64,000 bases of DNA from IMGVR_UViG_3300024350_000252:124001-188000, one strand, 5' to 3'; counted from the first letter of the stretch, positions 51,401 to 64,000 are shown. Notes: a model not told the origin generated them from the sequence alone. Made by a program: numbers and translations.

Positions 51401-54400
51401 TCTCGTATCAATCAAGTTATCAATACAAATTATACTTCAGAAACTGTATCATCAGATATTACTGCTTTATTAAAAATAATCACAGATGCTATAACAGCAG
51501 GTGTATCTACTAATATTCCTGCTCAGGTACAACCAAATTATACTATCTTGGCTAAAACTGGAGTATATTATGAAACATTACCTATCGTTGTGCCAGCGTT
51601 TACCGCGATAGTAGGAGACGAATTAAGATCTACAAACATACGTCCAGCTGCTTCGCAAGTAGCTGCTGGTGATGTCACTTACAGTCTAGCAGCATTGGCT
51701 TATATCAAGACTATAATCAGCAATGTAGTGACTGGTACCACAGTAACTACTAATCAAATCACATATTCACAAGATAAAACACTGCCTTTGGCTACAGGTA
51801 CTGAAGGAACTACCGTACAGAATCTTGTACAAAATATCATCGACTATATTAATTTCTATATCAATAGCACAGGCAGTGCTCCAGCTATGACTGGTACCAA
51901 CACACCGGCTAGCACTTACGATCCGTATGCCGCTGCTAGATTGTTAGAATTGAACAGAAACTTTATCGTAGCTCAAACTAATGCCTATATAGCAGCGACA
52001 TATCCTGCTTATAGTTACAATGTGGCATCATGTTCTAGGGACGTTAATCGTTATATAGATGCTCTTAAATATGATCTAGTCTATACAGGAAATTATAAAA
52101 CATTAACATACGCAAAACTATATGTCAATGCGGTAACTGGCAGTCTCTTACAAAATATGTTCTTGGTAAGAAATGCCTGTGGTCTAAGAAATTGTACCGT
52201 ACAAGGATTGACAGGTACATTAGGATCAGCCAACGCATATGGAACTAAGAGACCTAGTGCTGGAGCCTATGTCAGCCTAGATCCAGGCTATGGACCAAAC
52301 GATTCGGATGCTTGGGTAACCACAAGATCTACATATGTACAAAACGTGACTACATTTGGCACGGCGGCAATCGGTCTTAAGATCGATGGTAATTTACATA
52401 ACGGTGGCAATAAATCTGTTGTTGCTAACGACTTTACACAGGTCATCAGCGATGGTATCGGTGTATGGTGTACCAATAATGGGTTGACAGAACTTGTGTC
52501 TGTGTTCTCGTATTATGGACACATGGGATACCTAGCAGAAGCTGGTGGTAAGATACGTGCTACTAACGGTAACTCATCATATGGTGATTACGGTACTGTG
52601 TCTGAGGGTGTTGATGCGACAGAAGTTCCGATCACTGCTCAGATTGACAATAGAGCATCCGCAGCACAAGTTGGGTTGACAGTACAAAACGGCAATGCTA
52701 TACAGAGATTAGAATTTACTAATGCTGGTATAAACTATAATAATTCTGCTACATTTACTTTCAACGGGGCAGGTATTAATGCGGCAGCAGTATTTGACGA
52801 AACTAGAGATAATGCTATTTTTGAAGCTAGACAATTACAGTTAGCAGCAGATGGTTCAGATGGCATGTATGGCGGATCATCATACTATACAGCACAGAAC
52901 GTTGCCCAGGCGGGCGGTCTATATCAGATCACGCTAGCTGCTACAGATAGCCAAACTTCTAGCGGTTATCTGGGAATGAGAATAGTCACTGTATCAGGTA
53001 CTGGTGCAGCTCAACAGGCTAAGATCATCAACTACAACGCAGGTAACAAGATCGCTCTTGTGGCTAAAGAATCATTCGCAGATATCACAGTTACTGGTAG
53101 CACTATCAGTGGTAACACTTTGACTACTACTGCCGCAGAACAAGATAGATTGTATGCTAACATGCCATTGTATCTTAGCGCAGCTATTGGTGGGTTGAGT
53201 GCTAACTCTTTATATTATGTGGTTGGTTCTAGTATCGCTACACCCGGAACTACTTTCCAAGTTTCAACAGCACCGAGCGGATCTGCTGCTACGATAACAG
53301 CTACAACAACAGGACAAAACGTCACATTATATCAAGCAGGTTGGGAAGGAGCTATCAACGGTACCACTATCACATCACCGGATCCTTCTACATTATATTT
53401 GATCGAACCGAGAGTAACATTTGCTGCTCCAGGATTTAAACAAAACGCTACAGGCACACTACCGACCGTAGCTGTTGGATATAAAGATGGTGTGTTTAGT
53501 CAGACAAGATCTACTCATACAGGAGTGTCAGCGAGCGGTGGCGCTGGTTCAAGCGCAACCTTCAACATTACTAGAGTAGGATTGGTTTATACTGTAACAT
53601 TAAACAACGGTGGTACGGGCTATGCTGTGGGAAATACTCTAACTATTTTAGGAACCAGTGTCGACGGTGCTACTCCAAGGAATGACATCACGATAACAGT
53701 TACAAAAGTTACAAGTCCTACAGGAGTTATCAGTGCGTTCAGCTCTACTGGTTTAGGTAGAGGTGGACAGTTCTTTGCTTTACCAAACAGTGGAGCAACA
53801 GGTGCATATTCAAGGGATGGCAGTACATGGACATCTACTACTATCACTAACCAATCTTGGGGAACAGTAGCTACTGGTACTATTAGTAACGTGGATTATG
53901 TACAAATATTGCCAGGTAGTGGATCGGCTAATTTCCAATACAGCACCAATGGAGGACAAACGTGGACAAGTTCTACGCTGCCAACTACACAATCATGGAC
54001 CAGTTCCGCATTTGGTAATGGTGTATTCATGGCAGTGTCCAGCACATCTAATACACCTATAACATCATCAAATGGTACGAGCTGGGCTGTTACAGCCGGA
54101 AACCTTGGCGCTTTTACTAATTTAGTAGGAGTTGCTTACGGATTGGGTAGATTTATGGTATTGCCAGGATCAGCAGCTAACACAACAGCATCATACAGTC
54201 TCAATAACGGCACTACATTTGTGGCTACGACATTACCTTCCAGCCAGACATGGTCTGGTATAGCATATGGTAATGGAAGATTTGTAGCCATAGCGTCAAC
54301 TAATAGAGCAGGTGCTATCAGCATAGATGGTGTAAACTGGACAGCAGTAACACTACCGAATGGAACTATGACCAAGATCAGATATGCTCAAGGTCTGTTT

Positions 54401-56104
54401 ATGATGATAACTAGCGGTAGTGCTAATACTGTATGGACATCGCAAGATGGTATCAATTGGACTAACAGGACATTTGCTACCAGCGATACGAGAGCATTCC
54501 CATTCTTTGGTGATCCAAACAATGTACCAAGCTGGATAGTTCTACCGTCGAGTGCTACTACTACAGGTATCATAGCAAAAACTGGTGCTACTGCTACAGG
54601 CAGAGTTTTAGTAACTAACAACAGTATTTCTCAAACTAGAATCGTTGAACCTGGTTCGGGATATCCGTTCGGATCTGTAACTAACGTAGGACCTACAACA
54701 ACTATCACAGTAACCAGCGTATCAGGAACTACTATAACCACTTCAACAAACTTGACTACTGCTGGTATACTATCAGATCAACCTATAGTATTCAGCGCAG
54801 GATTAGGCAATATCGTCGGCGGCAGTACATATTATGTGTTAACGGCTAGTGGCACATCGATGACTATTAGCTCTAGCTTACAAGGAACTGCTTTCACTGT
54901 AGGCACAGCATCTGGTACTATCACTGGTACTACTGCTAGCGTGATCAAAGTTGATCAAACTGATAATCTAGTCAATGGTCAACCTGTGAACTTTACCAAT
55001 TTAGCTGCGGTTGGCTTGTCTACTAATAAAGCATACTATGTGATCAGCGGTAGTATCACTACTACCAGCTTCAGAGTTTCACAAAATACAGTATCTTCGA
55101 CAGCGGCAACGCTGACCACACCAGCATCTAGTTTGGTGAATGCTTTTTATAACGCAGGCGGTGCTATAACTATAACTGATCCGAACCGTGTGTTTGCTGC
55201 CCCTATACAAGTAAGAGCTGGATCTAGTGTATTGGCTAATCCTACATTTACCAATAGAGGTACTTTATGGACTACAGCTACAACAACAATATCAGGCGAC
55301 GGTGTTGGAGATATATTCCAACCAGGTCAATATATCTCTATCAAGAACATTAGCTCACTGCCAACAGTTGGATCGAATGTGGAATTCGCTTCATTACCGG
55401 GACAGTATTTCAAACTAGTTACTACCAGAAACTTGATAGGAACTGGTCCATATACTGCTACATTCCAGATCAGTCCGTTAATGTCCGTGACAGATTCTCC
55501 ACCAGATGGCGATGCTATCACTGTAAGAATCAGATATAGCCAAGTGCGTCTAACTGGACATGATTTTTTGAGCATCGGTACTGGTAACTTTACCAATACA
55601 AATTATCCAGGAATACCACTGATCGCTTCTGATTCGGCCAAGCAGACCAAAGAGTCCGCCGGAGGTCGCGTGTTCTTTACCAGCACTGACCAAGACGGTA
55701 ACTTCAACGTTGGTAACTTGTTCTCGGTACAACAGGCTACAGGTACTGCTACCCTAAATGCTAACGCATTCAATCTAGCAGGACTACAGAGCTTGAGCTT
55801 AGGCTCAGTTAACGTGGGAGGTAGCGCAGGCGCTACTATCACTGAATTCAGTACAGATCCATATTTCACAGCTAATAGCGATGCTATATTGCCTACTCAA
55901 CGAGCTATCAAGGCATATGTAGCTTCACAAATTGGTTCTGGATCCAGTACTTTGAACGTAAATACACTTACTGCTGGTTCGATCTTTGTAAGCGGAAACA
56001 CCATTACAACCACTACAAACCTCGAAATCAAAGTAACTACAAAATTGAATTTCATCAAGGGTGTGGATGGTTATCCAGTGGCCTTGAATTTGTTCTTAAC
56101 ATAA
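48422..56104 (+). CDS. Giant adhesin/fibre protein D (paralogue of C)
   Basis: 2560 aa; same architecture as C with shared blocks (GAYVSLDPGYGP, ELVSVFSYYGH, YSQVRLTGHD, GRVF.T.TDQDGNF) and extra insertions. Confidence 0.8.
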   Translation: MAEYKLGRIRFIWKDQWAAGTTYLKDDVVRKNGKVYICVIGHTAASDFYVDADNIPARWNQMSDGQTWRSDWSPDTVYYLNDIVKYGGQVYICTQGHTSAATYALGLEQDLDLGDSTVSKWHIFAESFDWKNDWVPNYRYKRHDIVKYGGNTYLCNTGHTSASDYTYGLEGLGLVTPGVQADIGKWDLYSESFEWKTDWAPSTRYKLHDVVRFGGTTYVCNLGHTSAATFDLGLEADQTKWDYFNQGIQYLYDWDNGDVNYKINDVVKYGGDLWICTKKHKSNTSTLFQTEEAAGRWKKFVEGLKFQDSWNSSTVYEPGDIVTYGGYAYVAKTNHSNVSPIAAVAGGINWSLYTTGFTLKNNWDQDTNYKVGEVVRLNGYSYACIADTTKYTTTVTATSQSTGQLTINNSLATTTSTATTSVTVNSVTYNYVRVNSGTGLSIGRSIVFTGTTFGGITANQTYYIVGLPTTTPQTIVSVAQASTIVTVTTNLVHGYTAGQTVTVTGTSLVDAANVVITAVPNAYTFTYDLASNTVPTTTVSGTVTPAAQIIISSSYNGSPLTLTTASGSMGVSAGETYFVGQAIRFSGTTFGNIQTGSTPKQTYWIYSVDGLNTLKISTTQYGSPVSTTATGTNGQSTITVTSLTGIALGFQVTGNGIGSGATVVSIVGYVVTLSQPNTSNITTGTGAITFSSYFVPQTQTGSMTAEIVAEPPNDTFWGRLNSGIKWTNSWVTDIDYFLGDAVRYGPNSYICIQQHHSLTSNRPDNDVTGTFWNLLANGQESSVLTTQGDLVYFGGSGPTRLPIGQDGQVLTVNGNTLAPNWKFWGSIDQVYYVATSGTDSAYPIYGATLDKPWKTIRYACEQILAGPRNPNAAYLINVNRQFIQRETVNWINYQIANNISPFTTGFTYDQTKCERDTGYVIDALVWDLTHGGNVRSRAAALSYVGGTYTLLSSQKTQTNAALNYAINNVLVAAVLANAAPFQNYQVLNGVAVGSRINQVINTNYTSETVSSDITALLKIITDAITAGVSTNIPAQVQPNYTILAKTGVYYETLPIVVPAFTAIVGDELRSTNIRPAASQVAAGDVTYSLAALAYIKTIISNVVTGTTVTTNQITYSQDKTLPLATGTEGTTVQNLVQNIIDYINFYINSTGSAPAMTGTNTPASTYDPYAAARLLELNRNFIVAQTNAYIAATYPAYSYNVASCSRDVNRYIDALKYDLVYTGNYKTLTYAKLYVNAVTGSLLQNMFLVRNACGLRNCTVQGLTGTLGSANAYGTKRPSAGAYVSLDPGYGPNDSDAWVTTRSTYVQNVTTFGTAAIGLKIDGNLHNGGNKSVVANDFTQVISDGIGVWCTNNGLTELVSVFSYYGHMGYLAEAGGKIRATNGNSSYGDYGTVSEGVDATEVPITAQIDNRASAAQVGLTVQNGNAIQRLEFTNAGINYNNSATFTFNGAGINAAAVFDETRDNAIFEARQLQLAADGSDGMYGGSSYYTAQNVAQAGGLYQITLAATDSQTSSGYLGMRIVTVSGTGAAQQAKIINYNAGNKIALVAKESFADITVTGSTISGNTLTTTAAEQDRLYANMPLYLSAAIGGLSANSLYYVVGSSIATPGTTFQVSTAPSGSAATITATTTGQNVTLYQAGWEGAINGTTITSPDPSTLYLIEPRVTFAAPGFKQNATGTLPTVAVGYKDGVFSQTRSTHTGVSASGGAGSSATFNITRVGLVYTVTLNNGGTGYAVGNTLTILGTSVDGATPRNDITITVTKVTSPTGVISAFSSTGLGRGGQFFALPNSGATGAYSRDGSTWTSTTITNQSWGTVATGTISNVDYVQILPGSGSANFQYSTNGGQTWTSSTLPTTQSWTSSAFGNGVFMAVSSTSNTPITSSNGTSWAVTAGNLGAFTNLVGVAYGLGRFMVLPGSAANTTASYSLNNGTTFVATTLPSSQTWSGIAYGNGRFVAIASTNRAGAISIDGVNWTAVTLPNGTMTKIRYAQGLFMMITSGSANTVWTSQDGINWTNRTFATSDTRAFPFFGDPNNVPSWIVLPSSATTTGIIAKTGATATGRVLVTNNSISQTRIVEPGSGYPFGSVTNVGPTTTITVTSVSGTTITTSTNLTTAGILSDQPIVFSAGLGNIVGGSTYYVLTASGTSMTISSSLQGTAFTVGTASGTITGTTASVIKVDQTDNLVNGQPVNFTNLAAVGLSTNKAYYVISGSITTTSFRVSQNTVSSTAATLTTPASSLVNAFYNAGGAITITDPNRVFAAPIQVRAGSSVLANPTFTNRGTLWTTATTTISGDGVGDIFQPGQYISIKNISSLPTVGSNVEFASLPGQYFKLVTTRNLIGTGPYTATFQISPLMSVTDSPPDGDAITVRIRYSQVRLTGHDFLSIGTGNFTNTNYPGIPLIASDSAKQTKESAGGRVFFTSTDQDGNFNVGNLFSVQQATGTATLNANAFNLAGLQSLSLGSVNVGGSAGATITEFSTDPYFTANSDAILPTQRAIKAYVASQIGSGSSTLNVNTLTAGSIFVSGNTITTTTNLEIKVTTKLNFIKGVDGYPVALNLFLT

Positions 56105-56117
56105 CGGAGAAAAATAA

Positions 56118-56441
56118 ATGGCAACAGGAGTTTTGGGCACATACGATCATACCGCAGGAGCTTGGTTTGCTCTATATACGGTCCCAGCCACTACATTTTC
56201 GGTGGTCAGCTTGTCAATGTGTAACAGAAGCAATCAAGCTGTGAACGTAAGAGTAGCAGTTTCTACAAGTTCAGTTAGCCCTGCTAACGGCGAAATCATC
56301 GAATTTGATACAGAAGTATTAGGAAAAGGTGTGCTAGAAAGGACCGGTATCGTGATGGATGCCGGTAAAGTGCTTCTAGTTTACTCAAATGCTGCGGGCG
56401 TTAGCTCGGTAGCATTTGGAATCGAAACATCAACTGTATAA
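56118..56441 (+). CDS. Small beta-sandwich adaptor-like protein
   Basis: 107 aa; YTVP...SMCNR...LERTGIVMDAG. Confidence 0.7.
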   Translation: MATGVLGTYDHTAGAWFALYTVPATTFSVVSLSMCNRSNQAVNVRVAVSTSSVSPANGEIIEFDTEVLGKGVLERTGIVMDAGKVLLVYSNAAGVSSVAFGIETSTV

Positions 56442-56467
56442 TAAATATAGCATCAGGGGAATAAACA

Positions 56468-56800
56468 ATGGGAAGATATCTTACAACTACAGGAACAGCA
56501 GGCAATACGGTCAGAGAGATCTCAGGAGCCTACTCTGCAGTAGTCAACGACAGAATTTTAGCTAATACTGCTAGTAGCGGTTTTACTATAACACTGCCTG
56601 CTAACAGCACATTATTTTTGAATGATACTATTCAGATCATTGACGTAGCAGGAAACGCAGCTATTAACAACATCACTATCGCTAGAAACAGCTCTAAGAT
56701 CAACAATATCGCAGACGATTTCGTGATTGACGTTAACTATGCTGTGATCACGTTGATCTATACAGGATCAACATATGGTTGGATCGTAGCCAACGCTTAA
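56468..56800 (+). CDS. Small tail-fibre-associated protein (T4 gp34 N-terminal-type repeat)
   Basis: 110 aa; ITLPA...NDTIQIIDVAG....NNITIARN...I......LIY.GSTYGW; own late promoter. Confidence 0.6.
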   Translation: MGRYLTTTGTAGNTVREISGAYSAVVNDRILANTASSGFTITLPANSTLFLNDTIQIIDVAGNAAINNITIARNSSKINNIADDFVIDVNYAVITLIYTGSTYGWIVANA

Positions 56801-56818: not shown

Positions 56819-57790
56819 ATGCCAACCTCGCTTAAAGCAACTAACGGTTTTAAAAGTCAGGCTTTCTGGAATCAGGAAACTAATCTAGAAAGAGGGACTA
56901 TACATGTTTACACCCCAGGTAACGACTTCCAAAGTTTCCCCTGCTGCGGATGTTTCGTCGCACCTAGCTGTGGTACAGCAGTCATAGAAATCTGGGGAGC
57001 TGGCGGAAGCGGTTCTCGTATGTGCTGCTGTGGTGGCGGCATGCCAGGAAATTCAGGTGCCTATGCCAAAAAGACTATCAGAATGGGCGCAGGCTGTTAT
57101 ATCTATTTCTATGTAGGCATGGCCTGCGGTAACGCAGACTCTTTATGTTATAGAGGCTGTTCAGAAGCTACCTGTCTATGTTGGTTTGGTAACCAAGGAC
57201 TTAGTGGCTGTATGTGCGCACAAGGTGGACAGGGCGGTATCAGTTACTGTTCTACAGGTACTTCTATGTACTGCTGCTATGCGGCCAATAGTTGGCCAAC
57301 TACAAACTTAGGCAATGGTTGCGGAATCGTCTGTAATAATTGCTCAGGATCATATCAAGCATGTGCCTACGGTGGAGACGTTAACCTCTGTAGTAGGATT
57401 TCCTGCGTGGTCTATCTAGGCTGCTTGCCCAGCTGCGTATGTAACATCAATTGGAGCATGGCTATCCCCGCAGGACAATTTTCAAAATGCGGAGGCTATG
57501 TCAGCTACACGACAGAAAATAACCAAGACTACGCTAACTGGGTCGGTGTAGGACAACATAATCATATCATGGCACTGAATGCTGCCAGTCGTTGGCCACA
57601 ACAGGGTATGCCATGGGCATACTGCTGGGGGTTTGGCGGTGGTTGCGGCTGTTACGAAAACGAAGGCTGTACAGGATTTGTTCCACCAGGACATCCTGGA
57701 ATGGGACCGCTTCCATGTCCAGATGTGAGAGATCATGCTAGAAAAGGCGGCAGTGGCATGGTAAGAATTAAATTTATACCGGGAACATAA
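56819..57790 (+). CDS. Cys/Gly-rich protein 1 (glycine-rich fibre-tip-like domain)
   Basis: 323 aa, ~33 Cys by hand count; IEIWGAGGSG.RMCCCGGG.PG..GAY and C-terminal PCPDVRD...GG.G.VRI.F. Confidence 0.8.
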   Translation: MPTSLKATNGFKSQAFWNQETNLERGTIHVYTPGNDFQSFPCCGCFVAPSCGTAVIEIWGAGGSGSRMCCCGGGMPGNSGAYAKKTIRMGAGCYIYFYVGMACGNADSLCYRGCSEATCLCWFGNQGLSGCMCAQGGQGGISYCSTGTSMYCCYAANSWPTTNLGNGCGIVCNNCSGSYQACAYGGDVNLCSRISCVVYLGCLPSCVCNINWSMAIPAGQFSKCGGYVSYTTENNQDYANWVGVGQHNHIMALNAASRWPQQGMPWAYCWGFGGGCGCYENEGCTGFVPPGHPGMGPLPCPDVRDHARKGGSGMVRIKFIPGT

Positions 57791-57791
57791 G

Positions 57792-58772
57792 ATGCCAACT
57801 TCGATTAGAACATGGACACAAACTAGACTAAACTTCATCGCAGATAATGAAGAAAACTTAGAACGAGGTTCGATCTATCTGTTCAGCGGTTCTGCTGAAA
57901 GAACGAATTTTAGTAACGGTGGTTTTTGCTGGGTAGCACCTGCTACCGGACAGGCTATCGTAGACATTTGGGGAGCTGGTGGTAGCGGTGCTCGTATGTG
58001 CTGCTGCGGTGGCGGTCTTCCGGGCAATCCAGGAGCATTTGCTAGAAAATGTCTATGTATACAGTCTGGCTGCTGGATCTGCGGATTTACTGGTATGAGC
58101 TGCGGCTCACCAGATCTTTGCTTTAGAGGTTGTTCGGAATATTCAGGTATCTGCTGGCAAGCTAGCGGTACAAACGGTTGTGTATGCGCCCAAGGTGGCC
58201 GCGGAGGCACTAGCTACTGTTCTACAGGAACTTCTCTCTATTGCTGTTTTACAGCTGGTAACTTCTGTACTACACTAATCAACGCTAACTGTGGTGTTGT
58301 CTGTAACTATGGTTCAGGCACAGCCAGCTGCTGCGCACAAGCATTCGGTGGCGACATTAACTGTTTTGGCGGTTTTAGTTGTGTACTTTTCGCAGGTTGT
58401 CAACCAAGTTGTCCATGTTCAACAATCTATCACATAGCTACACCTCCATACTATTATTCAACATGCGGTGGAGTGATCACTTACACCTCTGAAGGTGATA
58501 GCGGAGCAGCTAACTGGTCGGGCGGTACATTGACAGGATACATACACGGTATGTCAGTCATGGGTCGTCAACCACATCACGGTACACCTCCAGAGCAATC
58601 TTGCTGGACTGGCGGTCGTACATGCGGATGTTACGAAGGTCAAGGATGTATTCCTTTTGTACCAGCAGGATTCCCAGGACCTGGTCCTTTGCCTTGCCCA
58701 GATGTTCGCGATATGGCATTCCGTGGCGGTCATGGTGCTGTAAGAATCAAATTCATAGCCGCAACAGAATAA
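57792..58772 (+). CDS. Cys/Gly-rich protein 2 (paralogue)
   Basis: 326 aa, collinear with protein 1. Confidence 0.8.
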   Translation: MPTSIRTWTQTRLNFIADNEENLERGSIYLFSGSAERTNFSNGGFCWVAPATGQAIVDIWGAGGSGARMCCCGGGLPGNPGAFARKCLCIQSGCWICGFTGMSCGSPDLCFRGCSEYSGICWQASGTNGCVCAQGGRGGTSYCSTGTSLYCCFTAGNFCTTLINANCGVVCNYGSGTASCCAQAFGGDINCFGGFSCVLFAGCQPSCPCSTIYHIATPPYYYSTCGGVITYTSEGDSGAANWSGGTLTGYIHGMSVMGRQPHHGTPPEQSCWTGGRTCGCYEGQGCIPFVPAGFPGPGPLPCPDVRDMAFRGGHGAVRIKFIAATE

Positions 58773-58784
58773 GGTGAAATAAGA

Positions 58785-59768
58785 ATGGCACAATCGCTTA
58801 ATAGCTTAGTAAGATTAAAAACTCCAGATAGGAATGAAGATAACCTTGAATTAGGCCAGATCTTTGTGTTCAGTCCTGGCACCATGTATACCAACTTCTG
58901 TTATAACGGTGGTTCTGGTTTCTGTTGGAAAGCTCCAGGAACAGGTACAGCAGTTATCGAAATGTGGGGAGCTGGTGGTAGCGGTGCTAAGATGTGCTGC
59001 TGCGGCGGCGGAACTCCAGGAAATGCAGGTGCTTATGTAAGAAAAACTATTTCGGTTAACTCTAGCACATATGTTTGCGGTTGTACCGGATTTTCCTGTG
59101 GTAACTCAGACTCATTATGCTATAGAGGTTGCTCAGATCCTTCGGGATTAAACTGGGTGAATGGTACTGGTGCGATAGGAGCTACCAGTGGCTGCTTATG
59201 TGCCCAAGGTGGTAACGGTGGCCTTAGCTGGTGTTCTACAGGTACTTCTATGTATTGTTGTATGGGGGCTAGCGGATGGTGTACCACTTATCTAGGTACA
59301 GGTTGCGGTGTGGTCTGTAATTACTGTAATGGTATGTGGATTGCCTGCGGGTTTGGTGGAGACATTAACTGCTGCGGTCGATTCAGCTGTATTACCTATT
59401 ATGGTTGTCTACCTAGCTGTATTTGTTTGTTCCAATATCATATTGCTGTACCGGCTAATTTCTTCTCATGCGGTTGCGGTAGTATGGCTAATTTCACAAC
59501 AGAAAATGATAATAGGCATTCTAACTGGTCAGGCCAAGGTGTTAACCAACAGATGAACGCATTAGGAGCATTGAGTAGATCGCCGAGACAAGGTATTCCG
59601 CAAAGCTACTGCTGGCGTTCAGATCGTAAGTGTGGATGTTATAATATGCAGGGCTGTATGAACTATAACCCACCTGGTGTGGGCGGTGTCGGACCAGCTC
59701 CGTGCCCAGACGTCCGCGATCACGCTATGCGTGGTGGAATGGGCGCAGTGCGTATTAGATTCTTTTGA
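58785..59768 (+). CDS. Cys/Gly-rich protein 3 (paralogue)
   Basis: 327 aa, collinear with proteins 1 and 2. Confidence 0.8.
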   Translation: MAQSLNSLVRLKTPDRNEDNLELGQIFVFSPGTMYTNFCYNGGSGFCWKAPGTGTAVIEMWGAGGSGAKMCCCGGGTPGNAGAYVRKTISVNSSTYVCGCTGFSCGNSDSLCYRGCSDPSGLNWVNGTGAIGATSGCLCAQGGNGGLSWCSTGTSMYCCMGASGWCTTYLGTGCGVVCNYCNGMWIACGFGGDINCCGRFSCITYYGCLPSCICLFQYHIAVPANFFSCGCGSMANFTTENDNRHSNWSGQGVNQQMNALGALSRSPRQGIPQSYCWRSDRKCGCYNMQGCMNYNPPGVGGVGPAPCPDVRDHAMRGGMGAVRIRFF

Positions 59769-59789: not shown

Positions 59790-60440
59790 ATGAGAAAGTT
59801 ATTTCAAATTACATTGCCCGACGAACCATACAAAACAGCCACTACTAAAAATCAAAAAGTAGACTGTATGTATGTGGGCCCACGATATATGGTACTTTGT
59901 ATCGATAATACTACTGATTTAGTAAAATATGTAGGTAGACGTGCTGACACGATCGAAGAAGCAGAATTAGATAATCACGTAGAAGATGATCATTATCATG
60001 TTTTGCTAGATGCTTCTGTGAATACATTTGAAGCAGCATATCTTACAGGACAGTACGAACACGGTGAGATAGAGAATTATACCGAAACGTTACCTACAAA
60101 AAACGCAGCAGGTGAGTTCGAAACTTATACATATCACTATGATGATTACAGAGGTATTATAGGACAGATTTATTGGAATCAGGTTCTTTATTACAATCCT
60201 TCAAATAAAACTTTCAAAGAACCCGCAAGAAGAGAACATGCTACTGACTGGGATCAAGTAGTAAAAACTACTAAAGATGGGGCTGCTGAAATACGTAAAA
60301 TGTTAGAAGCTAATGATTATTTTCCAGCTCAATTAGCAGTTATCAATGAATATCTAGATTGGGTTGATACTTTTGAAGAAAAGTATGCTGATGTAGATCA
60401 TTGGAAAGTTCCATTTCCACCATATCCAAACATGGCTTAA
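59790..60440 (+). CDS. Putative fibre-assembly chaperone
   Basis: 216 aa, acidic, ends WKVPFPPYP like tail-fibre assembly proteins; follows the Cys-rich trio; own ATAAATA. Confidence 0.45.
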   Translation: MRKLFQITLPDEPYKTATTKNQKVDCMYVGPRYMVLCIDNTTDLVKYVGRRADTIEEAELDNHVEDDHYHVLLDASVNTFEAAYLTGQYEHGEIENYTETLPTKNAAGEFETYTYHYDDYRGIIGQIYWNQVLYYNPSNKTFKEPARREHATDWDQVVKTTKDGAAEIRKMLEANDYFPAQLAVINEYLDWVDTFEEKYADVDHWKVPFPPYPNMA

Positions 60441-60521
60441 TTTAGTCTGGACCAGATCTAGGTCGACTGTTACCGTATAGCTAATATATAGTAGCACTCG
60501 ACCTATATTCTTGGAGACTAA

Positions 60522-61478
60522 ATGGAACAGCAACAACCAACACAGCGATCAAAAGCCTTTTTCTTAAATGGCGGCGCTGGCAGAGTTCTATGCTCTATCC
60601 CGGCATTAGAAAAATACGAAGAAGAATCAGGGGATAAAGATTTCATCATAGTGTGCGAAGGTGGTACGGAAGTGTTCAAAGGACATCCTACACTAGACAG
60701 CAGAACATATGACAATTGGCACAAGAATCTTTTTGTAGAAAAAATCAAAGATCGCGATTGTGTAACACCCGAGCCTTATAGAGTTTGGGAATATTACAAT
60801 CAAAAATGCGATCTAGCACAGGCATTTGATATCGAAATCAATAGAAAAGGCATTAGAGAATTACCTAAACCTAATCTAAGATTGAGCAAAGACGAATTGT
60901 TAGTAGGTAGACAGCTAATCGCCGACGTCAAGAAAAAAATCAAGAAAGAAAAAATCATAGTTTTCCAACCATTTGGCCGAGGCATAGACTATGTCGATGG
61001 TTCTTTTGTAGATCGTACTAACAGAAGCTTTGAATTTAAAGATGTAAAATCAATCATACGAAAACTTCAAGAAGCCAATTACGGTGTCGTAATGATGGGA
61101 GAAATGCGGCTCGATCTTACCAGCGAAAAACTAAAAGATGATGTAGCAGCACCAGAAAACACTACCATAAGACAGTGGGCAGCTATCATCAAATACGCAG
61201 ATCATTTCTTGGGCTGTGACAGTGTGGGTCAACACCTAGCCTATATCGTAGGCAAACAATCTACTGTAGTATTCGGATCTACATATCCAGTTAACGTGTC
61301 TTACCCTAATTGTAAGTACATGAATCTTCTAGATATGGCTGAAGAAATAAGAGAATATAGTCCTATCAGGATTACACTAGACGAACGTATTGATAGAAAA
61401 CTAGAAGGAGTTATGTCCATGACTCCGGAAATTGTTGATTATGTAGTGAATGCTGTTTTAGGGAAGAAACAAAAATGA
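60522..61478 (+). CDS. Glycosyltransferase, GT-B/GT9 (heptosyltransferase)-like
   Basis: GGAGRVLCSIPAL (GG.GD-like), IVFQPFG, AAIIKYADHFLGCDSVGQHLA...STVVFGST. Confidence 0.75.
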   Translation: MEQQQPTQRSKAFFLNGGAGRVLCSIPALEKYEEESGDKDFIIVCEGGTEVFKGHPTLDSRTYDNWHKNLFVEKIKDRDCVTPEPYRVWEYYNQKCDLAQAFDIEINRKGIRELPKPNLRLSKDELLVGRQLIADVKKKIKKEKIIVFQPFGRGIDYVDGSFVDRTNRSFEFKDVKSIIRKLQEANYGVVMMGEMRLDLTSEKLKDDVAAPENTTIRQWAAIIKYADHFLGCDSVGQHLAYIVGKQSTVVFGSTYPVNVSYPNCKYMNLLDMAEEIREYSPIRITLDERIDRKLEGVMSMTPEIVDYVVNAVLGKKQK

Positions 61479-63289
61479 GTGAAAGCAAGAATCCAATGTT
61501 AAACACTGGCTGGATCGCAGCCATAGCTAGAGGTCATAATTCAGGTATCTGTCTATTCAAAGACGGAGAGATCGTTTTTTCTGCTGAAGAAGAAAGATTT
61601 ACCAGACAGAAATACGACGGCGGTCCGTATGCTTCGATGATGAAAATCAAAGAATACACAGACAAAATCGATTATCTAGTAGTAGCACACACACAAAAAT
61701 TAAATGAAACTGCGGGTCGTGTTGACTATTCTGGTGATGATGTATACACAGGATTAGCTCGTAAGATGAATCTTATTGATCGAAAAGCTGATTTACATAA
61801 TCATCCTCAAGTAATTGACCTTAGTTTTATGCATCATAAGCTACACGCTGCTTGTGCGTTTTATCGTTCGGGATTTGATGATGCTGTAGCATTGATTGTA
61901 GATGGTGCCGGTACTTTCATCCAGATGTCTTATGCTAACCAACCTATATGGGTATGGGAAGTAGAAAGTATCGTAGACTGTTCATATCCATCAAAGTTCA
62001 AAACTTTGTACAAGCATTATGGTACTAGAGAGCCTATTGCTGGTGCTATCGAAACTAGCATTCCGTCTGATCAGTACGGTGAAGTAAATGATTTTCATGC
62101 TGCCGTATTATCAGACAGAGCAGGTATCGTTAAGACTTACGAAGCAGTCACAGAATATTGTGGGTTCAGTGCTATCGAAGCAGGCAAGACTATGGGATTG
62201 TTCCCATACGGACAGAAAAACGATAAGATTCCTCCATTGTTTGATTTTACATCTAAGGTACCCTTATCAAACAGAAATGTTATAGTTCCAGCATATCCTT
62301 CGTCTGCTAGAGTCAACGCACAACTATTTGATTATTTGGACGAAGAAATTCCAGAAGGAGTAGATCCTACTAAATTACAAAGTCGTAGAGATTTGGCTTA
62401 TGCTTGTCAAACACAGACTCAAGACCAAGTAGTGAGATTGATACGAAAAGCTGTAGAAATTAGCGGCAAGAAGAAAGTAGTGATCAGCGGTGGCTATGGT
62501 CTTAACTGTGTGGCCAATTATCATTATCTAGAAGCATTGAAAGACGGGGGTATCGAAATTTATGTAGAACCTATCTCTAACGATGCCGGAACAGCTATGG
62601 GAGCAGGACTGATGTTTTGGCATGCCATGACTGACAACACAGACATACAGAAACTAGATACCCTTTACCTCGGACCTAAGTACGAATATACACAGGAAGA
62701 AATTGCGGAAAAGGTCAAGTACGCAGGTGGCGAGTTGACAGACGCTACCAATGAACAAGTAGTAGAACTGCTACGTTCTAAGAATATCGTGACGATCTTC
62801 CAAGGTAGATCAGAAAACGGTCCGAGGGCCCTAGGCAATAGAAGTGTTTTATTTGATCCTACATTTCCAGATGGAAAGGATTTTGTAAACACTGTCAAAC
62901 GTCGAGAATATTTCCGTCCTTTTGCGGGCAGCATTATACATGATGTTGTACATGATTGGTTTGATCTGCGCGGCATGGATGAAAGTCCTCACATGATGTA
63001 TGCTGTAAACTGTAAGCCCGGAATCGCAGAAAAGATACCCAGCATCATACACGTAGACGGTACCTGTAGAATACAGACTGTAAAACGTGAGCAAAATCCT
63101 CATTATTATGATTTGATCAAGGCTTTTTATACAGCTACAGGAATTCCTATCCTGTTTAATACCAGCTTTAATTTGGGCGGTGATCCGCTAGTAGAAACAC
63201 TAGATGATGCTATAGATACCTTGATACGCAGCGATATAGAGTATCTGTACCTGCCAGAATACGGCAAACTGATCAAAATAGCCAACTGA
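61475..63289 (+). CDS. O-carbamoyltransferase, CmcH/NodU/TobZ family
   Basis: GHNSG..EEERFTRQK, HHKLHA, VDGAG, GKTMGL..YG, SGGYGLNCVAN, NDAGTAMGA, SENGPRALGNRS, KRREYFRPFA, HVDGTCRIQTV, NTSFN. Confidence 0.95.
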   Translation: MSESKNPMLNTGWIAAIARGHNSGICLFKDGEIVFSAEEERFTRQKYDGGPYASMMKIKEYTDKIDYLVVAHTQKLNETAGRVDYSGDDVYTGLARKMNLIDRKADLHNHPQVIDLSFMHHKLHAACAFYRSGFDDAVALIVDGAGTFIQMSYANQPIWVWEVESIVDCSYPSKFKTLYKHYGTREPIAGAIETSIPSDQYGEVNDFHAAVLSDRAGIVKTYEAVTEYCGFSAIEAGKTMGLFPYGQKNDKIPPLFDFTSKVPLSNRNVIVPAYPSSARVNAQLFDYLDEEIPEGVDPTKLQSRRDLAYACQTQTQDQVVRLIRKAVEISGKKKVVISGGYGLNCVANYHYLEALKDGGIEIYVEPISNDAGTAMGAGLMFWHAMTDNTDIQKLDTLYLGPKYEYTQEEIAEKVKYAGGELTDATNEQVVELLRSKNIVTIFQGRSENGPRALGNRSVLFDPTFPDGKDFVNTVKRREYFRPFAGSIIHDVVHDWFDLRGMDESPHMMYAVNCKPGIAEKIPSIIHVDGTCRIQTVKREQNPHYYDLIKAFYTATGIPILFNTSFNLGGDPLVETLDDAIDTLIRSDIEYLYLPEYGKLIKIAN

Positions 63290-63314
63290 AAAAAGCCCCG
63301 CAAGGGGCTTTTTT
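63289..63314. terminator. Bidirectional intrinsic terminator
   Basis: AAAAAAGCCCC-GCAA-GGGGCTTTTTT directly after the carbamoyltransferase stop codon. Confidence 0.9.
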
Positions 63315-63358
63315 ATTATGTCCGAAATCAGTTAAATACATAATACAAGAGAGTGACC

Positions 63359-64000
63359 ATGACTGATTTCAACAAGTTTTTTAACATAGACGTAAAGAAC
63401 ACATTAGGGTTAAAAAACGGGGTGAACTTTAACTATAAAGGGCCCTGGGTACAGGTCTATGAAAATACAGAACTAGATCGTTGGTATGTTGGTGATTTTG
63501 CCAGCGCCAATTATCATATTTCTATCGAATTCAACTCTAACAAAAAAGAAACATTATCAGTTTTAGTAGTTGCCCGCCCAGGGTATGCCAACTATACAGT
63601 TTACGGGCGTGTGGCTATCGACGATGAATTAGTTGATATATCTGCGGTGGTTAATAATAACCATCTATCTTTGATATTGAATCCAAAAGTAGCAGCATAC
63701 AAAGGTATGCGAGCAATATTTACAGCCACATATGCTGGTACGTTGACCGCACTATCTATACCTGCTACCCCGACATTTTTAGTCCCAGATACTAGTCCAA
63801 ATTCAGGCAGCGGAACTCCTGGTACCGGCAGTTCGGCTATAGATCTAACCAGCATCACTACAGATGTAGTACCTTTAGATACCGGAGTTAAAGACCTAGG
63901 CAAAACAGGAAAACGCTGGAGAGATCTTTTCATCAGCGGAAATTTAAACATCAATGGCGCTATCATTGGTGCTTCTAACAATGCTGTCGATTTACCAACA
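63359..64000 (+). CDS. Virion structural protein (runs off the window)
   Basis: Not in the ORF track (no stop). ATG 63359: MTDFNKFFNIDVKNTLGLKNG...DVVPLDTGVKDLGKTGKRWRDLFISGNL; the DLG...RW motif also occurs in fibres A and B; TAAATA at 63333. Confidence 0.8.
   Translation, partial: MTDFNKFFNIDVKNTLGLKNGVNFNYKGPWVQVYENTELDRWYVGDFASANYHISIEFNSNKKETLSVLVVARPGYANYTVYGRVAIDDELVDISAVVNNNHLSLILNPKVAAYKGMRAIFTATYAGTLTALSIPATPTFLVPDTSPNSGSGTPGTGSSAIDLTSITTDVVPLDTGVKDLGKTGKRWRDLFISGNLNINGAIIGASNNAVDLPT

What the first reader, a model, noticed from the sequence alone, without database searches (positions are those of the whole stretch)
59790..63289. Glycosyltransferase plus O-carbamoyltransferase cassette attached to the fibre module
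Seen: a GT9-like GT overlapping (ATGA) a complete NodU/CmcH carbamoyltransferase, closed by a strong terminator, embedded among virion genes directly after the Cys-rich trio. Established: this enzyme family O-carbamoylates sugars (Nod factors, tobramycin), and a phage member has been reported to carbamoylate 5-hydroxymethylcytosine. No hydroxymethylase or other DNA-modification gene is visible in this window. Inference: either a carbamoylated glycan installed on virion proteins or host LPS (surface masking or superinfection exclusion), or a new base hypermodification whose partner genes lie elsewhere.
Basis: partly seen in the sequence, partly recalled or inferred. Interest (0 to 1): 0.6.

Follow-up and report, generated by a model that had tools for sequence, protein, structure and literature searches.

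The report
Phage fibre-linked carbamoyl-heptose glycan cassette
A river jumbo phage carries, inside its tail-fibre genes, a two-gene unit (a heptosyltransferase-like enzyme and a sugar carbamoyltransferase) that, together with phage genes for making ADP-heptose, most likely decorates a virion or cell-surface molecule, not DNA, with carbamoylated heptose. The same cassette is known but unexplained in marine cyanophages.

Summary
Window 60522-61478 encodes a 318-aa protein whose confident model matches only GT9 heptosyltransferases at high Z. It overlaps by ATGA a complete 604-aa TobZ/NodU-type O-carbamoyltransferase (61475-63289), which is followed by a strong terminator. The stated start (59790) also takes in an undescribed 216-aa ORF, possibly a fibre chaperone.

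New points:
- The phage encodes HldE and HldD (ADP-heptose synthesis) 8.8 kb downstream, so the sugar is probably heptose.
- GT and CTase are linked in 80 of 80 related viral loci, almost always between fibre genes. The same cassette sits directly before the heptose genes in cyanophages P-SSM2, S-SSM7, S-CAM1 and Sf-FS3, where it was called "LPS genes" of unknown role.
- Distant GT homologues also lie in fibre modules of N4-like and other phages.
- A conserved hairpin with covariation and a conserved TATATAAT-like box separates the pair as its own unit. RNA-library contigs follow these borders.
- No dCMP hydroxymethylase or TET gene was found in five complete genomes that hold the cassette, and the CTase lacks the residues of the 5hmC enzyme.

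DNA hypermodification is therefore unlikely. A carbamoyl-heptose glycan is likely. A virion-protein acceptor is favoured over host LPS, but this is unproven.

The parts
48422..56104 (+). Giant fibre protein (2560 aa) that opens the module upstream
   Evidence: ORF. Homologues lie upstream of the GT in 76 of 80 related loci. A relative carries a CBM_5_12 domain.
56118..56800 (+). Two small fibre-like proteins (107 and 110 aa)
   Evidence: PHROG tail-fibre and tail families, E 1e-6 to 4e-18. Present in 68 of 80 loci.
56819..59768 (+). Three paralogous Cys/Gly-rich proteins (323, 326 and 327 aa; about 10% Cys and 17% Gly); context, and candidate acceptors
   Evidence: phrog_4205. Composition and weak homology to Cys/Gly-rich paralogues upstream of the GT in S-CAM1 and P-SSM2, and the same composition in S-SSM7. 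Present in about 70 of 80 loci.
59790..60440 (+). p216: conserved 216-aa protein with no family assignment; possibly a tail-fibre assembly chaperone. It is not part of the enzyme transcription unit.
   Evidence: No Pfam, PHROG, NCBIfam or PDB match. 41 homologues. Model pLDDT 95.9 with no PDB fold match. ESM Atlas TM 0.43-0.45 to a viral cluster that carries PF16778 Phage_tail_APC. 1 of 30 members hits Caudo_TAP at E 0.005. Homologous to S-CAM1 SXBG_00223 at the same position (hhalign 98%). Present in 71 of 80 loci.
60461..60503 (+). Conserved hairpin in the p216-GT spacer, followed by a T-rich run; terminator-like boundary element
   Evidence: The whole spacer folds at -31.7 kcal/mol, z -5.4. 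All 10 pairs of the core stem show compensatory changes across 14 relatives. RNA-library contigs of 3 runs stop at 60445-60452 and restart at 60510-60524.
60485..60492 (+). TATATAGT box in the hairpin loop, conserved as GATATATAAT in relatives; candidate promoter -10 element for GT-CTase
   Evidence: Conserved columns and sequences. Part of a promoter-like hit. A similar box lies in intergenic DNA before two virion structural genes. The function is inferred.
60513..60516 (+). Shine-Dalgarno GGAG of the GT gene
   Evidence: Read. Conserved in the spacer alignment.
60522..61478 (+). GT9-fold glycosyltransferase (318 aa), predicted heptosyltransferase
   Evidence: Invariant D233 and H238 and nearly invariant S234 in the C-terminal nucleotide-sugar motif. 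Nearly invariant R21 where WaaC has the catalytic D13.
61475..63289 (+). TobZ/NodU/CmcH-family O-carbamoyltransferase (604 aa), overlapping the GT by ATGA
   Evidence: The GPRALGNRS motif is conserved in all orthologous loci examined.
63289..63314 (+). Intrinsic terminator that closes the GT-CTase unit
   Evidence: Read. Folds at -17.2 kcal/mol, z -4.4. RNA-library contig depth falls from 9-11 to 0-2 just downstream in 3 runs.
63353..64000 (+). Start of p517 (517 aa, runs past the window), followed outside the window by p182, a 2172-aa fibre, and then HldE, a cupin and HldD
   Evidence: Locus L003 = genome 186001-206000.

Best explanation
GT (60522-61478) and CTase (61475-63289) form a translationally coupled, separately bounded two-gene unit that builds an O-carbamoylated heptose decoration.

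Proposed pathway:
1. The phage's own HldE (heptose-7-P kinase plus heptose-1-P adenylyltransferase) and HldD (6-epimerase), 8.8 kb downstream in the same fibre/neck module, raise the supply of ADP-heptose.
2. The GT9-fold enzyme transfers heptose to an acceptor.
3. The TobZ-type enzyme makes carbamoyl-adenylate from carbamoyl phosphate and ATP and O-carbamoylates the sugar, as WapO is proposed to do on HepII of Pseudomonas LPS.

The most likely acceptor is a protein of the virion's host-recognition apparatus: the fibres or the Cys/Gly-rich paralogues encoded just upstream. This would resemble the way TibC and AAH heptosylate beta-helical adhesins.

Shown: the folds and families, the gene linkage, the boundaries and the absence of 5hmC genes. 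Inferred: the donor sugar, the order of steps and the acceptor.
For: - Enzyme identities.
- Heptose supply. HldE's best hit is NF008454 at E 1e-117, and its adenylyltransferase domain is over the cut-off. HldD's best hit is TIGR02197 at E 1e-76.
- In T4-like relatives the order is GT, CTase, adenylyltransferase, kinase, cupin, epimerase, directly adjacent.
- GT and CTase are linked in 80 of 80 IMG/VR loci, with fibres flanking in 74-76 of them.
- More distant GT homologues also sit among fibre genes. Examples are N4-like Vibrio phage SBP1 (between the tail fibre and a tail protein), a GT8-GT9-like fusion after three Collar-domain proteins, a locus with a Collar protein plus GmhA, a HAD/nucleotidyltransferase and an epimerase, and three collar-like paralogues followed by the GT and a 1250-aa protein.
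- Extra SGNH-like sugar-tailoring genes are inserted between GT and CTase in some relatives.
- The unit is bounded by a covarying hairpin and a terminator, and RNA-library contigs respect both.
- The box before the GT resembles boxes before two virion structural genes.
- TibC is among the top structural matches, Z 19.7.
Against: - No result identifies the acceptor.
- Most characterised GT9 enzymes act on LPS cores, and WaaF (Z 21.6) scores slightly above TibC.
- The family lacks TibC's N-terminal extension.
- It has Arg where WaaC and WaaF have the catalytic Asp, so the chemistry may differ.
- About 10 of 80 loci keep GT-CTase without the Cys-rich trio or p216.
- The 80 loci are related to one another, so they count as only a few independent lineages.
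- Accessory genes often lodge near fibre genes for no functional reason.
- Contigs cannot show timing, strand or transcript ends.
- GmhA is absent from the phage set.
Confidence: 0.5

Rival explanations
1. Host envelope remodelling. The GT adds heptose to the host's LPS core or another envelope glycan during infection and the CTase carbamoylates it. This would block superinfection or stop progeny from sticking to debris.
For: GT9 is the LPS heptosyltransferase family, and WaaF and WaaC are among the best structural matches. GT9 heptosyltransferases, a TobZ-family CTase and 7-O-carbamoyl-heptose occur together in the Pseudomonas inner core (WapO/PA5005; PMC8005017). The cyanophage copies have long been labelled LPS genes (PMC3037559). 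The phage lacks GmhA, so the host probably makes heptose itself.
Against: This reading does not explain why the GT family sits inside fibre modules in several unrelated lytic lineages. The canonical catalytic Asp of WaaC and WaaF is replaced by a nearly invariant Arg. phmmer over 1.84 billion proteins found only 426 clusters, so this is a separate family far from cellular GT9 enzymes. From my own knowledge, marine Synechococcus and Prochlorococcus LPS is reported to lack heptose, so there is no obvious core acceptor in the cyanophage hosts.
Confidence: 0.22
2. DNA hypermodification. Heptose and/or carbamoyl groups are added to a hydroxymethylated or hydroxylated base in phage DNA.
For: A phage CTase that makes 5-carbamoyloxymethylcytosine is known (PMC8670742). 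Heptosylated 5hmC made by phage gene clusters is known (bioRxiv 10.1101/2023.12.21.572611).
Against: No thymidylate-synthase/dCMP-hydroxymethylase family gene was found in this record, in a 363,943-bp 100%-complete relative, or in four complete cyanophage genomes with the cassette. No TET/JBP gene scored above the cut-off in any of them. The known DNA heptosyltransferase is reported as T4 beta-GT-like, whereas this GT is GT9-fold. The CTase reads GPRALGNRS, like TobZ, where the 5hmC enzyme printed in the paper reads GPRALCNTT; this is a by-eye comparison. The neighbours are fibre genes, not nucleotide-metabolism genes.
Confidence: 0.04
3. Another acceptor or no catalysis. The pair might modify a soluble metabolite or a lipid carrier, or the GT-like protein might be a non-catalytic fibre assembly or structural factor, as GT9-like PnsB1 is in the plant NDH complex.
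For: The catalytic Asp is not conserved. GT9-fold proteins that serve as structural subunits do exist (7wff and 7f9o among the matches). The N4-like homologue is shorter, at 244 aa.
Against: The nucleotide-sugar motif (D233, S234, H238) and other residues are invariant or nearly so across 55 sequences that share 27-48% identity with the window protein. The GT co-occurs with ADP-heptose synthesis genes and sugar-tailoring enzymes. The CTase keeps its metal and adenylate motifs.
Confidence: 0.12

Closest known systems
Cyanomyovirus 'LPS gene' cluster, T4-GC 302-308 (P-SSM2 PSSM2_307-313, S-SSM7 SSSM7_120-133, S-CAM1 SXBG_00216-222)
   Same: Orthologous GT (43-54% identity) and CTase (48-62%) in the same order, after fibre genes and Cys/Gly-rich paralogues.
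   Different: In the cyanophages the heptose genes follow the CTase directly. Here they are 8.8 kb away, beyond a second fibre set. This genome is a roughly 355-kb-class jumbo phage related to PA5oct and Atu_ph07, not a kyanovirus. The function is untested in either; the literature calls these genes LPS genes or possible stuffer DNA.
Pseudomonas LPS inner-core heptosylation plus WapO (PA5005) heptose carbamoylation
   Same: GT9 heptosyltransferases combined with a NodU/CmcH-family carbamoyltransferase that is proposed to put a carbamoyl group on heptose.
   Different: That is a cellular, LPS-bound system whose GTs have the canonical Asp. The phage GT has Arg at that position and belongs to a separate, phage-restricted family.
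Bacterial autotransporter heptosyltransferases (TibC, AAH)
   Same: GT9-like fold (Z 19.7 to TibC). ADP-heptose is transferred to a beta-helical adhesin encoded next door (the biology is from my own knowledge).
   Different: The phage protein aligns only with TibC residues 86-392, so it lacks the N-terminal extension. It shows no Cys4 iron motif, and its oligomeric state is unknown.
Mycobacteriophage virion glycosylation (Freeman et al. 2023, cited in PMC12619734)
   Same: Phage-encoded glycosyltransferases decorate virion proteins.
   Different: Different GT families, sugars, hosts and target proteins (capsid and tail tube). No carbamoylation and no heptose.
5-hydroxymethylcytosine carbamoyltransferase (MetaGPA, PMC8670742) and DNA-heptosylating phage clusters
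   Same: The same CTase superfamily; heptose as a phage-installed sugar.
   Different: Those systems are linked to thymidylate-synthase homologues, or to a methyltransferase plus TET, and act on DNA. Those genes are absent here and the CTase signature differs.
TobZ / NodU / CmcH / GdmN / NovN O-carbamoyltransferases
   Same: Full two-domain architecture (Kae1-like plus YrdC-like), with metal-binding His/Asp and GPRALGNRS motifs.
   Different: Those enzymes act on antibiotics or Nod factors. The acceptor here is unknown.

Membership tests
Glycosyltransferase family 9 (PF01075, ADP-heptose heptosyltransferases) | GT-B fold closest to solved GT9 enzymes | tested here: met
   Model pLDDT 95.8. GT9 structures score Z 18.4-22.9 and all other GT-B folds 12 or less. 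Foldseek E 1e-11 to 1e-9.
Glycosyltransferase family 9 (PF01075, ADP-heptose heptosyltransferases) | Sequence score over Pfam's gathering threshold | tested here: not met
   20.7 bits against a cut-off of 22 for the window protein. 16 of 55 family members hit at E <= 1e-3, best 1.2e-8. NCBIfam heptosyltransferase III scores only 23.7 bits.
Glycosyltransferase family 9 (PF01075, ADP-heptose heptosyltransferases) | C-terminal nucleotide-sugar motif (D-S/T-G-x-x-H) | tested here: met
   D233 and H238 are invariant and S234 is nearly invariant. The motif aligns with the WaaC and WaaF motif in hhalign.
Glycosyltransferase family 9 (PF01075, ADP-heptose heptosyltransferases) | Catalytic Asp in the N-terminal G-D motif (WaaC D13) | tested here: not met
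   The motif GAGRVLxxxPAL compared with GDVLxxxPAL puts nearly invariant R21 at that position. The structural alignment starts at model residue 9 = WaaC residue 1, the same offset. No atom-level superposition was made.
Glycosyltransferase family 9 (PF01075, ADP-heptose heptosyltransferases) | Uses ADP-heptose as donor | not testable with these tools
   Supported only by context: HldE and HldD in the module.
Autotransporter heptosyltransferases (TibC/AAH) | N-terminal extension with an iron-binding Cys motif; protein Ser acceptor | tested here: not met
   The model aligns only to TibC 86-392 and the 318-aa protein has no such extension. The acceptor is not testable.
NodU/CmcH/TobZ O-carbamoyltransferases | Both Pfam domains over threshold, full length | tested here: met
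   Carbam_trans_N 93.6 bits (cut-off 24) and Carbam_trans_C 190.7 bits (cut-off 27). Aligns to TobZ along its length.
NodU/CmcH/TobZ O-carbamoyltransferases | Kae1-like metal ligands and the YrdC-like GPRALGNRS motif | tested here: met
   H21, the HHxxH segment at 119-123, D143 and the SNDAG Asp align with TobZ and 7xb6. The motif is present in all orthologous loci examined.
5hmC carbamoyltransferase clade (MetaGPA) | Linkage to a thymidylate-synthase/dCMP-hydroxymethylase homologue | tested here: not met
   No PF00303 hit in this record, in a complete relative, or in 4 complete cyanophages.
5hmC carbamoyltransferase clade (MetaGPA) | Residues at TobZ positions 408, 421 and 423 that differ most between CTases of modified and unmodified contigs | tested here: not met
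   The window protein has I, G, R. TobZ has W, G, R. The characterised 5hmC enzyme reads I, C, T by eye. No tree was built.
ADP-L-glycero-D-manno-heptose pathway | HldE (kinase plus adenylyltransferase) and HldD | tested here: met
   HldE models are the best hits (E 1e-117). The adenylyltransferase domain scores 182.7 against a cut-off of 181.5, and the kinase domain is below its cut-off. HldD scores 258.2 against 274.6 but is by far the best hit.
ADP-L-glycero-D-manno-heptose pathway | GmhA isomerase and GmhB phosphatase | tested here: not met
   No SIS_2 hit in this record, in the complete relative, or in three cyanophages. GmhB was not searched for. A conserved cupin with weak sugar-isomerase hits might substitute.

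The most novel reading that the evidence does not exclude
A widespread, phage-specific GT9-like family, with a dedicated carbamoyltransferase and phage-made ADP-heptose, O-heptosylates and carbamoylates tail-fibre or receptor-binding proteins of aquatic myoviruses, marine cyanophages included. This would be a viral counterpart of adhesin heptosylation by TibC and AAH. It would be the first virion glycosylation system in phages of Gram-negative hosts and would affect adsorption, host range or fibre stability.
Probability: 0.4. Interest if true: 0.75.

Novelty: new variant of a known kind. Interest (0 to 1): 0.55.

Why it matters
These genes have sat in cyanophage genomes since 2005 under labels that do not explain them. 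They have been called "LPS genes" or possible stuffer DNA, and one paper wrongly assigned the CTase to pyrimidine synthesis.

This work shows that they form a coherent ADP-heptose, heptosyltransferase and carbamoyltransferase module. The module travels with tail-fibre genes across unrelated phage lineages and is not linked to 5hmC genes. That turns an old annotation puzzle into a testable hypothesis: glycosylated, carbamoylated host-recognition proteins.

If true, it would matter for phage adsorption and host range in abundant aquatic phages, and it would extend virion glycosylation beyond mycobacteriophages. If the LPS reading is right instead, it would be a lytic-phage surface-conversion system.

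Tried and rejected
- Megablast of the region against phage records found nothing.
- tblastn with p216 against phage records found nothing.
- For p216, Foldseek against the PDB gave nothing. VIA-align gave only generic helical-hairpin matches to residues 150-216.
- Complex prediction for GT plus p216 returned 'no answer' (score 0.00). This is not evidence either way.
- The T4 late promoter TATAAATA is not enriched in the window: 3 matches against 6.6 expected. The sigma-70-type scan found fewer sites than shuffles.
- hhalign of the GT family against E. coli WaaC and WaaF aligned only the C-terminal domain, so the Asp-to-Arg mapping rests on the motif and on the start of the structural alignment.
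- The 2OG-oxygenase idea (hydroxylation before glycosylation) was dropped for this phage. p216 is not an oxygenase, and the only 2OG-Fe(II) gene in the record lies about 165 kb away. In S-SSM7 and Sf-FS3 an oxygenase does sit before the GT.
The paper's sequence was passed to no tool, and only a nine-residue motif was compared by eye.
- Papers on P-SSM2 temporal expression were sought, but no per-gene table is held.
- Four further look-ups of distant GT homologues gave contigs too short to inform.
- Operators' notes: read laying was given 5,901 letters. No alternative genetic code was used. The big protein search was used once, for the GT, because Pfam left it below threshold.


Full report
**What is there.** The finding's span holds three + strand ORFs: p216 (59790-60440), a 318-aa protein (60522-61478) and a 604-aa protein (61475-63289). 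The last two overlap by ATGA.

The 604-aa protein is a complete two-domain O-carbamoyltransferase:
- Carbam_trans_N scores E 2.2e-26 and Carbam_trans_C scores E 1.9e-56.
- It matches PHROG 'Nol-like carbamoyltransferase' at 1.8e-167.
- It aligns with the solved enzymes TobZ, GdmN, NovN and 7xb6 at E 1e-44 to 1e-58.
- The Kae1-like His/His/Asp ligands and the YrdC-like GPRALGNRS motif are in place.

By sequence the 318-aa protein is only marginally GT9. PF01075 scores 20.7 bits against a cut-off of 22, and 16 of 55 family members hit that model. A model built on 55 diverse homologues has pLDDT 95.8. It matches GT9 structures and nothing else at high score. The Z scores are 22.9 for Veillonella GT9, 21.6 for WaaF, 19.7 for TibC and 19.1 for WaaC, and every other GT-B fold scores 12 or less.

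A GC-rich hairpin followed by a U-run closes the unit at 63289-63314. It folds at -17.2 kcal/mol, z -4.4.

**Whose genome.** The window is bases 124001-188000 of a 238,047-bp IMG/VR virus record that CheckV estimates at 67% complete. It comes from riverine metagenomes. Its neck and tail genes are nearest (34%) to the jumbo myoviruses PA5oct, Atu_ph07 and Phosso. It has no psbA. A relative of 363,943 bp is rated 100% complete.

**The sugar.** After p517, p182 and a second giant fibre (2172 aa), 8.8 kb downstream of the CTase, lie three more genes:
- A fused HldE. NF008454 is the best hit at E 1e-117, and the adenylyltransferase domain scores over its curated cut-off.
- A small cupin.
- HldD, the ADP-glyceromanno-heptose 6-epimerase, at E 1e-76, just under its cut-off.

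The neck genes follow. This is the later half of the ADP-L-glycero-D-manno-heptose pathway. GmhA was not found in this record or in the complete relative, so either the host supplies it or the cupin replaces it. With a GT9-fold transferase present, heptose is the obvious donor sugar. This is an inference from context.

**Relatives and linkage.**
- The GT family is large but phage-bound. There are 3,752 proteins in the 90%-identity collection. A full phmmer pass over 1.84 billion proteins found only 426 clusters at 50% identity, so cellular GT9 enzymes are too distant to be found.
- In 80 IMG/VR loci with 55-100% GT identity, the CTase follows the GT in 80 of 80. Fibre homologues flank in 74-76, p216 precedes in 71, and the Cys/Gly-rich trio is present in about 70.
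- These loci are kin, so they count as few independent events. Independent support comes from other lineages.
- The T4-like cyanophages P-SSM2, S-SSM7, Sf-FS3, S-CAM1 and S-CAM3 carry the orthologous GT (43-54% identity) and CTase (48-62%) after their fibre genes and Cys/Gly-rich paralogues. Where the context was read (P-SSM2, S-SSM7, Sf-FS3 and S-CAM1), these lie immediately before the adenylyltransferase, kinase, cupin and epimerase genes. One IMG/VR locus has the same order.
- More distant homologues (25-31% identity) also lie in fibre modules. One sits between the tail fibre and a tail protein of an N4-like Vibrio phage. One is a GT8 fusion after three Collar-domain proteins. One lies beside a Collar protein, with GmhA, a HAD-nucleotidyltransferase and an epimerase on the same contig. 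One follows three collar-like paralogues.
- Some relatives have one or two SGNH-like genes inserted between GT and CTase. This fits a glycan-tailoring cassette.

**Boundaries and expression.** The 81-nt spacer between p216 and the GT folds into a long hairpin (-31.7 kcal/mol, z -5.4). Across 14 relatives with very different sequences, all 10 pairs of the core stem show compensatory changes. A T-run and the GGAG ribosome site follow the stem. The loop carries a conserved GATATATAAT box, which reads TATATAGT here.

In three of four metatranscriptomic runs from the same river system, assembled contigs stop at 60445-60452, restart at 60510-60524, and end at 63274-63352. Depth falls from 9-11 to 0-2 after the terminator. 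Contigs cannot prove transcript ends, strand or level, and DNA can be present in RNA libraries. Even so, the pattern fits a terminator plus promoter in the spacer and a GT-CTase bicistron.

A similar box, TATA(T/A)AATAG, lies in intergenic DNA before a virion structural gene, a tail gene and one gene of unknown function. This hints at late co-expression, but the sample is small.

**p216.** It has no family or solved-fold match, although its model is confident (pLDDT 95.9). Two weak leads point to a tail-fibre assembly chaperone. The first is TM 0.43-0.45 to a viral ESM Atlas cluster that carries Phage_tail_APC. The second is one family member that hits Caudo_TAP at E 0.005. It is homologous to the gene at the same position in S-CAM1. 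I read it as the last gene of the fibre unit, not as an enzyme of the cassette.

**Against DNA modification.** Heptosylated 5hmC also exists. Four points count against that reading here:
- The DNA-acting CTases are linked to thymidylate-synthase homologues. No such gene was found in this record or the complete relative, or in the four complete cyanophage genomes. No TET/JBP gene scored above the cut-off in any of them.
- At two of the three positions that paper singled out, this CTase and all its orthologues keep TobZ's G and R (GPRALGNRS). The characterised 5hmC enzyme reads C and T there. This comparison was by eye, and no tree was built.
- The known DNA heptosyltransferase is reported as T4 beta-GT-like, not GT9.
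- The neighbours are fibre genes.

**Mechanism and acceptor.** The best-supported chemistry is as follows. Phage HldE and HldD make ADP-heptose. The GT transfers heptose. The CTase forms carbamoyl-adenylate and O-carbamoylates the sugar, as WapO is proposed to do on HepII of the Pseudomonas core.

The acceptor is not shown. I favour a virion protein of the fibre module, at about 0.5, for three reasons: the GT family is repeatedly embedded in fibre modules of unrelated lytic phages, the promoter-like box is shared with structural genes, and TibC and AAH set a precedent by heptosylating adhesins encoded next door.

Host LPS remodelling stays a serious rival, at about 0.2. One feature fits neither model neatly. 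The catalytic Asp of WaaC and WaaF (the G-D motif) is replaced by a nearly invariant Arg (G20-R21). The base or the acceptor chemistry may therefore differ.

**Novelty.** The cassette is already present, and partly annotated, in public cyanophage genomes, and was noted as 'LPS genes' of unknown role (PMC3037559). This analysis adds several things: the heptose logic, the link to fibre genes across lineages, the transcription-unit anatomy, the distinct GT subfamily, and the case against DNA modification. If virion heptosylation is confirmed, it would be a new variant of known kinds (virion glycosylation, adhesin heptosylation, heptose carbamoylation).

Noticed in passing
window 60441-60521: The p216-GT spacer is a conserved RNA/DNA hairpin. 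All 10 core pairs covary in 14 relatives. A T-run follows the stem, and the loop carries a conserved GATATATAAT box. It is possibly a combined terminator and promoter, or an RNase III-type processing site that also masks the GT ribosome site.
   Followed up: partly
window 56819-59768; L004 8326-11126; L005 8976-11842; L001 6680-9073: The Cys/Gly-rich paralogues (about 10% Cys, 16-18% Gly, with WGxGGSG-type motifs) are not unique to this phage. Proteins of the same composition lie upstream of the GT in S-CAM1, P-SSM2 and S-SSM7, and those of S-CAM1 and P-SSM2 show weak homology to the trio. Their fold and role are unknown.
   Followed up: partly
L069 11005-12828; L039 11080-11943: In some relatives one or two proteins of about 300 aa that begin MSRLFxFGCSYT (an SGNH/GDSL-like block I) are inserted between GT and CTase. 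They have no Pfam hit and may be sugar O-acyl esterases or transferases.
   Followed up: partly
L005 16027-16371 (PSSM2_311) and equivalents: The roughly 110-aa cyanophage proteins annotated 'phosphoheptose isomerase' give no SIS-domain hit and only weak HAD-phosphatase hits. The annotation is probably wrong; they could be GmhB-like. The adjacent cupin, annotated 'cysteine dioxygenase', has weak sugar-isomerase hits.
   Followed up: partly
L106 5270-6946: A 558-aa fusion of a GT8 domain with a GT9-like domain follows three Collar-domain tail-fibre proteins in an unrelated phage contig. This suggests a two-sugar fibre-linked glycan.
   Followed up: no
window 57961-59254: RNA-library contigs of three runs join 58015 to 59232 with 208 other letters between. 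This is probably an assembly mis-join between the near-identical trio paralogues, not a real deletion.
   Followed up: no
window 59790-60440: The p216 model is very confident (pLDDT 95.9), yet its N-terminal beta-rich domain (residues 1-148) matches no solved fold. Invariant residues D11, P13, D74, E81, H150 and H204-W205-K206 suggest a specific binding or catalytic site.
   Followed up: partly
literature (PMC9146016): A cyanophage paper assigns the Nol-like carbamoyltransferase to the first step of pyrimidine synthesis. That confuses it with aspartate carbamoyltransferase; the Pfam families are unrelated.
   Followed up: no
genome G000 196051-198570 (beyond the window; L003 10051-12570): HldE is fused here (424 aa), whereas in cyanophages the kinase and adenylyltransferase are separate, overlapping genes. 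The module has been rearranged between lineages while keeping the same gene set.
   Followed up: partly
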